Assembly (NCBI GenBank): GCA_977020255.1
Contig: CDROCS010000506.1
Span: 1,860,001 to 1,924,000 of the forward strand
Length of the DNA stretch: 64,000 nucleotides
Source: Obrimoposthia wandeli
Taxonomy: Eukaryota
Reading direction: 5' to 3'
Under the pieces are notes generated by a model, which saw only the letters and a program-made list of their open reading frames with translations, had not been told where the DNA came from and ran no database searches. Below, one piece after another: positions 54,808 to 57,209 of this stretch. Numbering within the stretch: position 1 is the first letter of the stretch; each line of letters starts with the position of its first letter. A program made the translations under genes and the position numbers.

Positions 54808-55818
54808 TTATACTAATGACGTCGTCATTGGAAAGCCAAAACGAATGTTAATACACTGCATTGCTTGTGCTGCAGCACCTTTTAATAAGTTATCAATCGC
54901 CGACACAACAATTAAATCTTGTCCTTGTTGTTGCCATGCTAGATCGCAATAAGCTGTTTTCTCGACAGCTTTAATACTTGGCCAGCCACTTGGCAATAAA
55001 CGTACCATCGGCTGGTCTTGATAAGCTTCTTGATAAGCTGCCGTTACTTGCTCAGGTGTTACGCCAGCAACTAGTTTGACGTTAATTGTTGCTAATATGC
55101 CGCGTTTAAAGCTACCCAAGTGCGGCGTAAAAATAACCTCATGGCCTAGGTGTGTACTAATTTCTGGTTGATGACGGTGATTAAATACACCATAAGGGGC
55201 ATGGCTCACTTCGCAAAAAGCAGATGCTAATGACGCTTTACGTCCAGCCCCACTCACACCACTCACTGCATTGATAATAGGTTTCTGTTCAGCAGCGATA
55301 AGACCGTGTTGCGCTAATGGTTTTAGTGCTGATAACGACGCCGTTGGGTAACAGCCTGGAACAGCAATCAAATTTGCTTCAGCTATATCAGCACTCGCCC
55401 ATTCAGCTAAACCATAAACAGCACTTTTCAATTCTTTATCGAAGTTATGTTTAAAGCCGTAATAATTTTCGTAGAAAGCGGGATCGTTAACTCTAAAAGC
55501 ACCCGACAAATCAAATACCACAGCACCTTGAGCTAAAAACTCAGCGGCAATATCGTGGCTAACTTCATGTGCAGTAGCCAGTACAACGATATCGATATCC
55601 TGACAAATGTTTTTAATATTAGCAGTAGCTAACGGCTCAATCGTTTGGTCGACAACATTTAATAAATGACCATATAAAGAAGAAAACGATTTGCCAGCAT
55701 CTAAGCTGTGTTCTGAAACATACAAACCGGCAAGCTCGAGTTCAGGATGTTTAGTAATGTAATGGGCTAGTTCAGCGCCGGTATACCCGGTCGCGCCGAC
55801 TAAAATTGTTTTTAACAT
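54808..55818 (-). CDS. argC: N-acetyl-gamma-glutamyl-phosphate reductase
   Basis: [44 protein letters not shown]. Confidence 0.98.
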
Positions 55819-55913
55819 GTTTGACTTCCGTGTTTGCTAAATTGTAAAACGATGGGCAATTGCGCCCTTTTCGGTTGCACTCGCCTAATCAAATTAAGCG
55901 ACATCAATGCATT

Positions 55914-55952
55914 TTAAATACTGTCTCGTCGAAACCATGAAAAACGATTCAT
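55914..55952 (-). other. Candidate Arg-rich leader peptide MNRFSWFRRDSI in the argC 5' leader
   Basis: ATG AAT CGT TTT TCA TGG TTT CGA CGA GAC AGT ATT TAA, followed by several hairpins. The Shine-Dalgarno is weak (TGGGT). Confidence 0.45.
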
Positions 55953-55988
55953 TATCTAACCCATACGTTGTAAAGTAAGGATGATTAG

Positions 55989-56017
55989 AGAATAAAACAG
56001 ATTACATTTTTATGCAA
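55989..56017 (-). promoter_or_regulatory. Putative argC promoter overlapping the ARG boxes
   Basis: TTGCAT-17 bp-TATTCT. Confidence 0.5.
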
Positions 56018-56039
56018 CTTTTATGCATAAAAAAACAAT
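56001..56039. promoter_or_regulatory. Two ArgR boxes separated by 3 bp in the argE/argC divergent region
   Basis: ATTACATTTTTATGCAAC-ttt-TATGCATAAAAAAACAAT: two 18-bp imperfect palindromes with the canonical 3-bp spacing. Confidence 0.8.
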
Positions 56040-56060
56040 CAATCATTACAGGAACGTAAT

Positions 56061-57209
56061 ATGCAGCTACCTAAATTCAACGAACTTTATAAATCACTGA
56101 TCTTAACCCCTTCAATCAGCTCATTAGAAAAAGAGTTAGATATCAGCAACAAGCCTGTTATCGACTTACTTGCTGGTTGGTTCAGCGAACTTGGCTTTAG
56201 CATTAATATCACTAGCGTACCTGAAACTAATGGTAAATTTAATCTAGTCGCAACTTACGGACAAGGTGATGGCGGGTTATTACTCGCTGGCCACACAGAT
56301 ACCGTGCCATTTGATGACGGTTTATGGACTAAAGATCCGTTCCAACTGACCGAAAAAGACGATAAATGGTATGGTTTAGGCTCTATCGATATGAAGGGAT
56401 TTTTCGCCTTTGTATTAGAAGCATGTAAAAACATTGATTTAACAAAACTCGATAAACCTCTGCGTATACTCGCTACCGCCGATGAAGAAACCACAATGGC
56501 GGGTGCCAGAGCAATAGCAGCAGCGAAAAGCTTCCGCCCAGATTATGCGGTAATCGGTGAACCAACAAATATGGTCCCCGTGTTTATGCACAAAGGTCAT
56601 ATGTCCGAGGCAATTAGAATTACTGGACGCAGCGGTCACTCCTCTGATCCAGCCAACGGTATTAATGCGATTGAGATAATGCATCAAGTGACTGGGCAAT
56701 TATTAACATTACAACGTAAGTTAAAAGAACAATACGCCTGCGATCATTTTGTTATTCCACAACCAACCCTTAACTTTGGCCATGTACATGGTGGTGATAG
56801 CCCGAATCGTATTTGTGGTAGTTGTGAACTACACATCGACATGCGCCCTATTCCAGGTGTCGAACCAGATGAATTATTCATGTTACTCAACCAAGCGTTA
56901 TTACCGATCATGAAGCAGTGGCCCGGCGCAGTCGATGTTTATCATCTGCATGAACCTATCCCAGCTTATGCTTGTGATACAGACTCAGCATTAATAAAAT
57001 TAGCTGAAAAGCTAACAGGTGAAAGTGTTATCCCGGTAAATTACTGTACCGAAGCGCCTTTTATTCAACAACTTGGCTGCGATACTATTGTGATGGGTCC
57101 AGGTAGCATCAATCAAGCGCACCAACCTGATGAATATTTAGATTTAGCCCAAGTGAAACCAACTCAAGCTATTATCCAAAAACTGATTGAACAATCATGT
57201 AAAAACTAA
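56061..57209 (+). CDS. argE: Acetylornithine deacetylase
   Basis: [53 protein letters not shown]. Confidence 0.97.

What the first reader, a model, noticed from the sequence alone, without database searches (positions are those of the whole stretch)
55839..55982. Candidate arginine-sensing leader peptide and attenuator ahead of argCBFGH(A)
Seen: a putative promoter under the ARG boxes implies a 5' leader of about 165 nt. It holds a 12-codon uORF MNRFSWFRRDSI (55952-55914) with three Arg codons, two of them adjacent CGA CGA. Downstream on the minus strand are overlapping hairpins: (a) CGAC of the Arg codons can pair with GUCG near 55902-55899; (b) UCGCUUAAU-uug-AUUAGGCGA, a 9-bp stem at 55901-55881; (c) a longer GGCGAGUGC...GCAAUUGCC stem at 55885-55855 that competes with (b); (d) CGA-aaa-GGGC-gcaauu-GCCC-a-UCG at 55873-55850 followed by UUUUACAAUUU, terminator-like and competing with (c). 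Knowledge: this layout resembles his/trp/thr attenuators, CGA is a slowly decoded Arg codon, and E. coli arg genes rely on ArgR without classical attenuation. Inference: a second, translation-coupled arginine control layer that I do not know to be described for this operon. Caveats: the Shine-Dalgarno is weak, short uORFs arise by chance, and by eye I could not confirm that the folding logic runs in the expected direction.
Basis: partly seen in the sequence, partly recalled or inferred. Interest (0 to 1): 0.75.

Follow-up and report, generated by a model that had tools for sequence, protein, structure and literature searches.

The report
Arginine-codon leader ORF before argC
A 12-codon reading frame with two adjacent rare CGA arginine codons sits at the very start of the Moritella argC operon messenger, and unrelated-looking versions with the same CGA-CGA pair precede argC in Aeromonas, Enterovibrio and other relatives, which points to an undescribed ribosome-based arginine sensor, although how it is read out is unresolved.

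Summary

One sequence alone is not beyond chance. The leader folds no better than shuffles (z -0.73 and -1.15).

The comparative evidence is strong. Of 171 distinct argC leaders from the same order, 49 carry a short ATG ORF 120-175 nt before argC. It has an arginine run that nearly always starts CGA CGA and a stop 0-5 codons later. The peptides differ between genera.

CGA is 6% of arginine codons here. The motif is absent upstream of carA, argA and argR in five genomes that have it at argC.

Metatranscriptome contigs end at 55953/55954, 1-2 nt before the AUG. The ORF is therefore in the transcript but has almost no leader.

The trp-like hairpin switch is not supported. The terminator-like hairpin forms in every modelled ribosome state, and the simple logic runs backwards.

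Verdict: probably a real arginine-sensing leader ORF, apparently undescribed, with unknown read-out. Within Moritella the support is weaker: two of 13 genomes have lost the first CGA.

The parts
55953..55954 (-). Main 5' end of the argC operon RNA, either a primary start or a processed end
   Evidence: Run X1: a 7724-nt contig (depth 402) covers the operon and stops at 55954, followed by adapter letters GATCGGAAGAGC. The adapter's first A may be base 55954 itself. Run X2: a contig covering 55798-55953 stops at 55953.
55914..55952 (-). Leader ORF MNRFSWFRRDSI plus stop codon (12 codons)
   Evidence: Kept at 12 codons in 10 of 13 distinct Moritellaceae leaders. ORFs of the same design occur in other genera.
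55926..55931 (-). Tandem CGA CGA arginine codons, the proposed sensing site
   Evidence: Within 230 nt upstream of argC, CGACGA is almost always in frame inside a short ATG ORF, across at least 6 dissimilar peptide types. CGA is 6.2% of Arg codons, and none of 31 Arg-Arg pairs in the window's long ORFs is CGA-CGA.
55937..55952 (-). Small 5'-terminal hairpin AUGAA-N6-UUCAU that contains the start codon; as DNA, an ARG-box-like palindrome
   Evidence: Predicted. Invariant in the genus. It has 3 mismatches to the 14-nt ARG-box core, so it was not reported at 2 or fewer mismatches.
55876..55911 (-).
   Evidence: The inner stem has different sequences in different Moritella but still pairs. dG -12.6 kcal/mol at 37 C and -20.4 at 10 C.
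55846..55873 (-).
   Evidence: The most divergent Moritellaceae leader has a different stem, UUGGC-N6-GCCAA plus U6, at the same place. dG -7.9 kcal/mol at 37 C and -13.2 at 10 C.
55816..55829 (-). argC ribosome-binding site GGAAG (55829-55825) and start codon (55818-55816)
   Evidence: Invariant in Moritella.
56003..56037 (.). Pair of ARG boxes (ArgR operator) with cores at 56003-16 and 56024-37, 21 bp apart
   Evidence: If 55953 is a transcription start, they lie at about -50 to -84 from the argC RNA 5' end.
54808..55818 (-). argC, first gene of argCBFGH(A)
   Evidence: 99-100% identical to Moritella ArgC.
56061..57209 (+). argE, transcribed divergently
   Evidence: Named by its position opposite argC, as in E. 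coli and the published Moritella cluster (PMC1382215). Its protein was not searched.

Best explanation
The 12-codon ORF at the 5' end of the argC operon RNA is a real leader ORF. Its two adjacent CGA codons act as an arginine sensor.

CGA is read by the main arginine tRNA through a poor inosine-adenosine wobble. It should therefore be the first codon to slow when charged arginyl-tRNA falls. The signal would be how long a ribosome sits on 55931-55926.

Shown: the ORF; its presence in the RNA; and the in-frame conservation of CGA CGA across genera.

Inferred: that the ORF is translated; that stalling responds to arginine; and that stalling raises operon expression on top of ArgR control.

The read-out is not established. 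My ranking, given that the ORF is a sensor:
- Control of premature transcription termination in the 95-nt spacer, about 45%. In Moritella this would use the conserved weak terminator at 55873-55846. In the C-rich leaders of other genera it would use Rho, with the stalled ribosome and the hairpin after the stop codon hiding the loading site.
- Opening of the argC ribosome-binding region, about 25%.
- Protection of the RNA 5' end and the AU-rich stretch around the stop codon from RNase, about 10%.
- Something else, the remainder.

Because the RNA starts 1-2 nt before the AUG, the ORF would be translated as a leaderless or nearly leaderless message.
For: - Of 171 distinct argC leaders, 49 have a short ATG ORF with an arginine run starting CGA CGA (CGG CGA in one, L163), 120-175 nt before argC.
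- A CGACGA placed at random in shuffled leaders lands in such an ORF context about 3% of the time.
- CGACGA occurs in 51 forward-strand leaders and 2 reverse-strand ones.
- CGA is rare here, and no coding Arg-Arg pair is CGA-CGA.
- The ORF is exactly 14 codons in all 29 Aeromonas-type leaders, while insertions and deletions crowd the hairpin just after it.
- The motif is missing upstream of carA, argA and argR in five genomes that have it at argC.
- RNA contigs include the whole ORF.
- CGA is decoded more slowly than CGU or CGC in a Salmonella his-leader assay (PMC4046918).
- Theory says regulatory codons should be those read by the tRNA that loses charge first (PMC1183508).
- A hairpin starts 2-6 nt after the stop codon in Moritella and Aeromonas. 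In Aeromonas it is one of two conserved, mutually exclusive helices that swap with modelled ribosome position in 4 of 6 representatives.
Against: - Within Moritellaceae the codons are not inviolate. One genome has TGA in place of the first CGA, cutting the ORF to 7 codons. The most divergent one has CAA CGA. One strain lost the stop codon, giving 23 codons.
- The invariant 5' half of the ORF coincides with the RNA 5' end and a palindrome, so it may be conserved as DNA.
- The ORF has no Shine-Dalgarno in the main RNA species, 1-2 extra nucleotides precede the AUG, and the AUG lies in a small hairpin. From my own knowledge, all three lower leaderless translation.
- No modelled ribosome state changes the terminator-like hairpin.
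- Complementarity between the ORF and the argC start region is no better than for shuffled ORFs.
- No translation data or arginine-response data exist for this ORF.
Confidence: 0.55

Rival explanations
1. In Moritella the ORF is a by-product. The conserved stretch is kept as DNA: the argC promoter and start region, an ARG-box-like palindrome ATGAAT..TTCAT, and possibly the facing argE promoter. The arginine codons would do nothing here, whatever related ORFs do in other genera.
For: - The ORF's 5' half and the 40 nt upstream are nearly invariant in the genus, while the spacer downstream varies.
- The RNA 5' end lies at 55953/4.
- ARG boxes in E. coli and Vibrio also read ATGAAT and create chance ORFs such as MNKN.. 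and MNKKS...
- Two of 13 genomes changed the first CGA, one of them to a stop codon.
- Fold energies are ordinary.
Against: - The CGA CGA pair, its frame, and a stop 0-5 codons later recur in leaders that share no other recognisable sequence.
- The palindrome has 3 mismatches to the 14-nt ARG-box core.
- CGA is an avoided codon here.
Confidence: 0.22
2. One reading: a classical his/trp-type transcription attenuator. Stalling on the CGA codons would shift the competing stems (a)-(d) so that the terminator at 55873-55846 does not form.
For: - A leader ORF with regulatory codons 3 codons before its stop, as in trpL.
- A hairpin plus U tract kept at the same place in all Moritellaceae, with a different stem sequence in the most divergent one.
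Against: - The terminator-like hairpin and hairpin (b) form in all three modelled ribosome states, at 37 C and at 10 C.
- Pairing (a) is not conserved.
- The only conserved competitor of the terminator stem, GCAAUU/AAUUGC, looks weaker than the terminator (read by eye from the alignment; its energy was not computed).
- The stalled ribosome ends before the first stem, so stalling favours the terminator, the wrong direction.
- Aeromonas, Enterovibrio, Parasalinivibrio and most others have no hairpin plus U tract.
- The terminator is weak: U4, dG -7.9 kcal/mol.
Confidence: 0.1
3. CGACGA matters as RNA, not as codons. It pairs with argC codons 7-8 (GUCGG, 55800-55796). This closes the leader into a structure that limits argC translation, perhaps tuned to temperature in this cold-living genus. 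Translation of the ORF would be incidental.
For: - Consensus folds of both the Moritella set and the Aeromonas set contain this long-range helix.
- In Aeromonas it is 8 perfect pairs with probability about 0.95.
- The divergent Moritellaceae leader has CAAC/GUUG where the others have CGAC/GUCG.
- The C-to-U change that makes the stop codon in one genome keeps a G-U pair.
Against: - Duplex energies are not better than for shuffled probes.
- Pairing probability is only 0.05-0.34 in most Moritella and about 0 in four other leader types.
- GUCGG follows from the conserved Val-Gly of ArgC.
- This model does not explain why the hexamer is always in frame in an ATG ORF that ends soon after.
Confidence: 0.08

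Closest known systems
Ribosome-mediated transcription attenuators of amino-acid operons in Gammaproteobacteria (trpL, hisL, leuL, thrL, ilvL, pheL)
   Same: A short ORF in the 5' leader of a biosynthetic operon. Adjacent codons for the pathway's own amino acid lie a few codons before the stop (R R D S I stop here; W W R T S stop in trpL, from my own knowledge). A hairpin follows soon after the stop. In Moritella a hairpin plus U tract precedes the first gene.
   Different: There are only two regulatory codons, and their synonymous choice is fixed (CGA CGA). No working 1:2 / 2:3 / 3:4 switch could be modelled. The simple logic runs backwards. Most related leaders lack an intrinsic terminator. 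The ORF sits at the RNA 5' end without a Shine-Dalgarno. No Rfam leader family matches.
Polycysteine leaderless short ORFs of mycobacteria (Canestrari et al., bioRxiv 10.1101/834739)
   Same: A leaderless short ORF is the first cistron of a biosynthetic operon. It carries a run of codons for the pathway's amino acid, and ribosome stalling is the signal.
   Different: There, stalled ribosomes were shown to block a structure that hides the next gene's ribosome-binding site. Here such pairing is not above chance. The phylum differs, and leaderless messages are uncommon in Gammaproteobacteria (own knowledge).
Leader ORFs that gate Rho-dependent termination: tnaC, and mgtL/mgtP, corL, speFL (own knowledge); orf34 of the Salmonella speF leader, which uses arginine codons (PMC6386406, seen, abstract only)
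   Same: A ribosome stalled near the end of a leader ORF hides or exposes RNA just after the stop codon. In orf34 arginine codons are the sensed feature. The Aeromonas-type leaders are C-rich and G-poor from the CGA codons through the first stem.
   Different: No Rho site is shown here. The Moritella spacer is AT-rich with C about equal to G. The target is the arginine biosynthetic operon itself.
E. coli argECBH control region
   Same: Divergent argE / argC with a pair of ARG boxes between them and a long untranslated argC leader.
   Different: The E. coli spacer is 153 bp and has no CGA-CGA ORF. From my own memory, not checked here, Piette et al. 1982 (Nucleic Acids Res 10:8031) described its leader as not involved in attenuation.
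ArgL, the small ORF overlapping the start of E. coli argF (Weaver et al., bioRxiv 10.1101/511675)
   Same: A small upstream ORF in an arginine biosynthesis gene whose translation affects the downstream gene.
   Different: It overlaps the 5' end of argF in another frame. A stop codon introduced in it raised argF expression. No tandem CGA sensing was reported in the passages I read.

Membership tests
Classical leader-peptide transcription attenuator (trp/his type) | Short ORF inside the transcribed 5' leader of the operon | tested here: met
   The ORF at 55952-55914 lies within RNA contigs that end at 55953/4. This is indirect, because the data are contigs and not raw reads.
Classical leader-peptide transcription attenuator (trp/his type) | Clustered codons for the amino acid made by the operon, conserved in relatives | tested here: met
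   Tandem CGA CGA, in frame, in 49 of 171 distinct leaders of several genera. Eleven of 13 Moritellaceae genomes keep both codons.
Classical leader-peptide transcription attenuator (trp/his type) | Intrinsic terminator (GC hairpin plus U run) between the leader ORF and the first gene | tested here: inconclusive
   A weak one is present and positionally conserved in Moritellaceae. None was found in Aeromonas, Enterovibrio, Parasalinivibrio and others. No 3'-end data.
Classical leader-peptide transcription attenuator (trp/his type) | Mutually exclusive antiterminator and terminator whose choice depends on ribosome position, with stalling giving read-through | tested here: not met
   Constrained folds give the same terminator hairpin in all ribosome states. 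Manual logic gives termination on stalling.
Translational attenuation by a leader ORF (ermC/cat type; mycobacterial Cys short ORFs) | A structure that sequesters the downstream ribosome-binding site and overlaps the stalled ribosome's footprint | tested here: inconclusive
   Consensus folds contain pairing between the ORF's 3' half and the argC start region. Masking raises accessibility from 0.48 to 0.66 in the window only. Duplex energies equal those of shuffles.
Leaderless mRNA | Transcript begins at or within a nucleotide or two of the start codon | tested here: inconclusive
   Contig ends at 55953/55954 against the AUG at 55952. Whether the end is primary or processed is not known. No good sigma-70 promoter is seen for this start (and by eye).
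ArgR regulon operator | Pair of 18-bp ARG boxes spaced 21 bp centre to centre in the control region | tested here: met
   Core matches at 56003-16 (1 mismatch) and 56024-37 (2 mismatches).
Any Rfam cis-regulatory leader family | Match to a curated covariance model | tested here: not met
   No credible match in window 55000-57000 at E up to 10. None at gathering score in 11 related leaders.

The most novel reading that the evidence does not exclude
A family of short leader ORFs with a fixed tandem CGA CGA pair forms a second, ArgR-independent arginine control layer for the argC operon across Moritellaceae, Aeromonas and its relatives, and some Vibrionaceae. In Moritella it would be translated from a leaderless or nearly leaderless RNA. 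Its read-out would not be the classical terminator/antiterminator switch. If so, arginine biosynthesis, the textbook case of repressor-only control, has ribosome-mediated attenuation in a large group of marine and aquatic Gammaproteobacteria.
Probability: 0.45. Interest if true: 0.8.

Novelty: new variant of a known kind. Interest (0 to 1): 0.68.

Why it matters
Arginine biosynthesis in enteric bacteria is the standard example of control by a repressor alone. From memory, the long E. coli argCBH leader was explicitly described as not attenuating. A conserved arginine-codon leader ORF in related genera would add arginine to the short list of amino acids sensed by leader-peptide translation.

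The fixed use of the slow CGA codon read by the main arginine tRNA would be a natural test of ideas on which synonymous codons make the best starvation sensors. Aeromonas is genetically tractable and carries the clearest version, so the question can be tested directly. The unusual layout also suggests a read-out different from the trp paradigm: the ORF at the RNA 5' end, no working antiterminator, and no intrinsic terminator in most genera.

Tried and rejected
- Rfam scans of the window and of 11 related leaders found nothing.
- A third ARG box over the ORF start has 3 mismatches to the core, so it is not convincing.
Pairing (c) is never in a predicted fold.
- The classical attenuator switch fails, because constrained folds are identical for the terminator in all states.
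- Pairing between the ORF and the argC start region appears in consensus folds but is no better than shuffles.
- A regulon-wide use of the motif was not found. It is absent upstream of carA, argA and argR in five genomes.
- E. coli has no such ORF.
- Nine literature searches found no description of an argC arginine leader peptide.
- Two Moritella papers could not be read. Xu et al. 2000 (PMC94458) is not held. A search of the library for Xu et al. 2003 (J Mol Biol 326:353) returned only papers that cite it.
- A relatives search centred on the window's own assembly failed, because that assembly is a 1.35-Gb eukaryotic genome.
- The scan's earlier findings had nothing near this place.
- The six genomes with MKTNFSHNSRRRSHL-type ORFs could not be named with the tools at hand.

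Full report
**Setting**

The window is Moritella DNA. Its ArgC is 99-100% identical to that of Moritella dasanensis ArB 0140. The contig sits in a 1.35-Gb, 6912-contig assembly, so it is a bacterial contig inside a eukaryote's assembly.

argC (54808-55818, minus strand) heads argCBFGH(A). argE (56061-57209, plus strand) diverges from it across a 242-bp spacer. This is the arrangement published for Moritella (PMC1382215).

**The observation**

The ORF ATG AAT CGT TTT TCA TGG TTT CGA CGA GAC AGT ATT TAA lies at 55952-55914, with CGA CGA at 55931-55926.

- Hairpin (b), 55901-55881, is real. It is the inner part of a larger hairpin (55911-55876) that starts 2 nt after the stop codon.
- Hairpin (d), 55873-55850, with UUUU at 55849-46, was also found by the terminator scan.
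- Two ARG-box cores lie at 56003-16 and 56024-37.
- Pairing (a) is not conserved, and pairing (c) never appears in a predicted fold.
- The leader folds no better than shuffles (z -0.73; z -1.15).

Taken alone, this sequence does not show more than chance.

**Comparative evidence**

I collected argC upstream regions from three sources:
- 80 named genomes;
- 13 Moritellaceae genomes;

That gave 171 distinct leaders. Of these, 49 have a short ATG ORF, 120-175 nt before argC, with an arginine run that starts CGA CGA and a stop 0-5 codons later. One of them, L163, starts CGG CGA instead.

The peptides are otherwise dissimilar:

| Group | Leader peptide |
|---|---|
| Moritella | MNRFSWFRRDSI |
| Aeromonas | MFCHLIYNRRHTPA, MFCHLICNRRRISA |
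| Enterovibrio nigricans | MDKFSTPLLQRRRRR |
| Parasalinivibrio latis | MDFCFTARIFTYRRRLA |
| Vibrio sp. Of7-15 | MNQAKHIALYSLRRRRI |

Further points:
- Within 230 nt of argC, nearly every CGACGA is in this frame and context. The exceptions are two inside the argE coding region, and Aeromonas salmonicida, where ATA replaces the ATG.
- The hexamer is in 51 forward-strand leaders and 2 reverse-strand ones.
- A CGACGA planted at random in shuffled leaders lands in such a context about 3% of the time.
- In the window's long ORFs, CGA is 6.2% of arginine codons, and none of 31 Arg-Arg pairs is CGA-CGA.
- In all 29 Aeromonas-type leaders the ORF is exactly 14 codons, while insertions and deletions pile up just after it.
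- Five genomes that have the ORF at argC have no CGACGA and no comparable ORF in the 400 nt upstream of carA, argA or argR.
- Most Vibrio, Aliivibrio, Agarivorans, Xenorhabdus and E. coli K-12 lack it.

Whether these ORFs descend from one ancestor or arose repeatedly, six nucleotides, their frame, a start and a nearby stop have been held while the rest diverged. That is the signature of a translated regulatory ORF.

**Why CGA**

In a Salmonella his-leader assay, CGA is translated more slowly than CGU or CGC, although the same tRNA reads all three. Pairs containing CGA gave the strongest stalling (PMC4046918).

Attenuation theory predicts that regulatory codons should be read by the isoacceptor that loses charge first. 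That is the one with high codon usage relative to its amount (PMC1183508). Here CGU, CGC and CGA make up about 90% of arginine codons.

**Limits within Moritella**

Eleven of 13 genomes keep CGA CGA.
- One genome (L085) has TGA at the first position, truncating the ORF to 7 codons.
- The most divergent genome (L006/L093) has CAA CGA.
- Strain JT01 (L003) lost the stop codon and reads 23 codons.

The invariant 5' half of the ORF coincides with the RNA 5' end and with a palindrome, ATGAA-N6-TTCAT. That palindrome resembles an ARG box but has 3 mismatches to the core. Within-genus conservation can therefore be explained as DNA signals. The case for function rests mainly on the cross-genus pattern.

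**RNA evidence**

Four metatranscriptome runs hold this stretch, as assembled contigs only.
- Run X1: a 7724-nt contig at depth 402 covers the operon, stops at 55954, and continues into Illumina adapter sequence. The adapter's first A may be base 55954 itself.
- Run X2 (same study): a low-depth contig stops at 55953.
- Contigs on the argE side begin at 55998 (X1) or 55950 (X3, another study).

Contigs cannot prove a start, and a processed end would look the same. Still, the dominant argC RNA appears to begin 1-2 nt before the AUG.

This has three consequences. And the ORF would have to be translated without a Shine-Dalgarno.

I found no convincing sigma-70 promoter for this end (and by eye). 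If 55953 is a transcription start, the ARG boxes lie at about -50 to -84 from it.

**Read-out**

I folded the nascent leader with the ribosome absent, stalled with the first CGA in the P site, or at the stop codon, at 37 C and at 10 C. Hairpin (b) and the terminator-like hairpin form in every case.

Stalling therefore favours the terminator, which is the wrong direction.

The terminator-like element itself looks real. It is kept at the same place in all Moritellaceae, and the most divergent leader has a different stem and U6. It is weak, however (dG -7.9 kcal/mol at 37 C). Most other genera have none.

In Aeromonas-type leaders, two conserved, mutually exclusive helices follow the stop codon. 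They swap with modelled ribosome position in 4 of 6 representatives. The region from the CGA codons through the first helix is C-rich and G-poor. This fits a Rho-loading site hidden by a stalled ribosome, but that is inference.

A long-range helix between the CGA region and argC codons 7-8 appears in consensus folds of both genera. It has one apparently compensating change in the divergent Moritellaceae leader. Its energy is no better than for shuffled sequences, and it is absent in four leader types.

I therefore regard the sensor as probable and the read-out as open.

**Known systems and novelty**

The design works like a leader-peptide attenuator but fails the defining switch test for the trp/his class.

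The closest precedents are:
- leaderless polycysteine short ORFs of mycobacteria (10.1101/834739);
- leader ORFs that gate Rho, including the arginine-codon orf34 of Salmonella speF (PMC6386406);
- E. coli ArgL, a different kind of small ORF at argF.

Nine full-text searches and two Rfam scans found no description of an arginine leader ORF at argC. That is not proof of absence, since most subscription papers are not held.

**Verdict**

The sensor is supported; the hairpin logic is not.

- Probability that this ORF is a working arginine sensor: about 0.55.
- Probability that it is a DNA-level by-product in Moritella: about 0.22.
- Interest: 0.68.

Noticed in passing
whole window (contig C506 of G000): The window's assembly has 1.35 Gb in 6912 contigs, so it is a eukaryote's genome. 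This contig, more than 1.9 Mb long, is Moritella, either a contaminant or an associated bacterium.
   Followed up: partly
L001 (CALJHL010000115.1): A metagenome bin labelled 'uncultured Thalassotalea sp.' carries an argC and leader 100% identical to this Moritella window. The contig is probably mis-binned.
   Followed up: no
L056 (Aeromonas salmonicida ATCC 33658), about 150 nt before argC: The leader ORF's ATG is ATA, while the rest, including CGA CGA, is intact. This may be loss of the sensor in this species.
   Followed up: no
L085 and L090 (Moritella genomes), -75 to -20 before argC: A second short ORF (MQASAIGKGEVARRFTI and similar) with CGT CGT runs across the terminator-like hairpin in these two genomes only.
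   Followed up: no
window 55838-55919: A sediment metatranscriptome contig (run X4, depth 24.7) from a related strain skips 82 nt of the leader spacer and otherwise resembles the L006-type leader. The spacer between ORF and argC varies in length in nature.
   Followed up: no
window 55998 and 55950: RNA contigs on the argE side start at 55998 (run X1) or 55950 (run X3). The argE and argC RNAs may start almost back to back, rather than from facing promoters as I recall for E. coli.
   Followed up: partly
window 55854-55867, plus strand: Read on the plus strand, the same GGGC-N6-GCCC stem is followed directly by TTTT. It therefore looks like a terminator in both directions in this strain, but not in L006.
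   Followed up: no
Aeromonas leaders (for example L058), ORF codons 1-4 and the argC Shine-Dalgarno region: With a ribosome modelled on the ORF, minimum-energy folds pair AAUGUUCUGUCA at the ORF start with UGACUUGGAAUAUU at the argC ribosome-binding site. Its significance was not tested.
   Followed up: no
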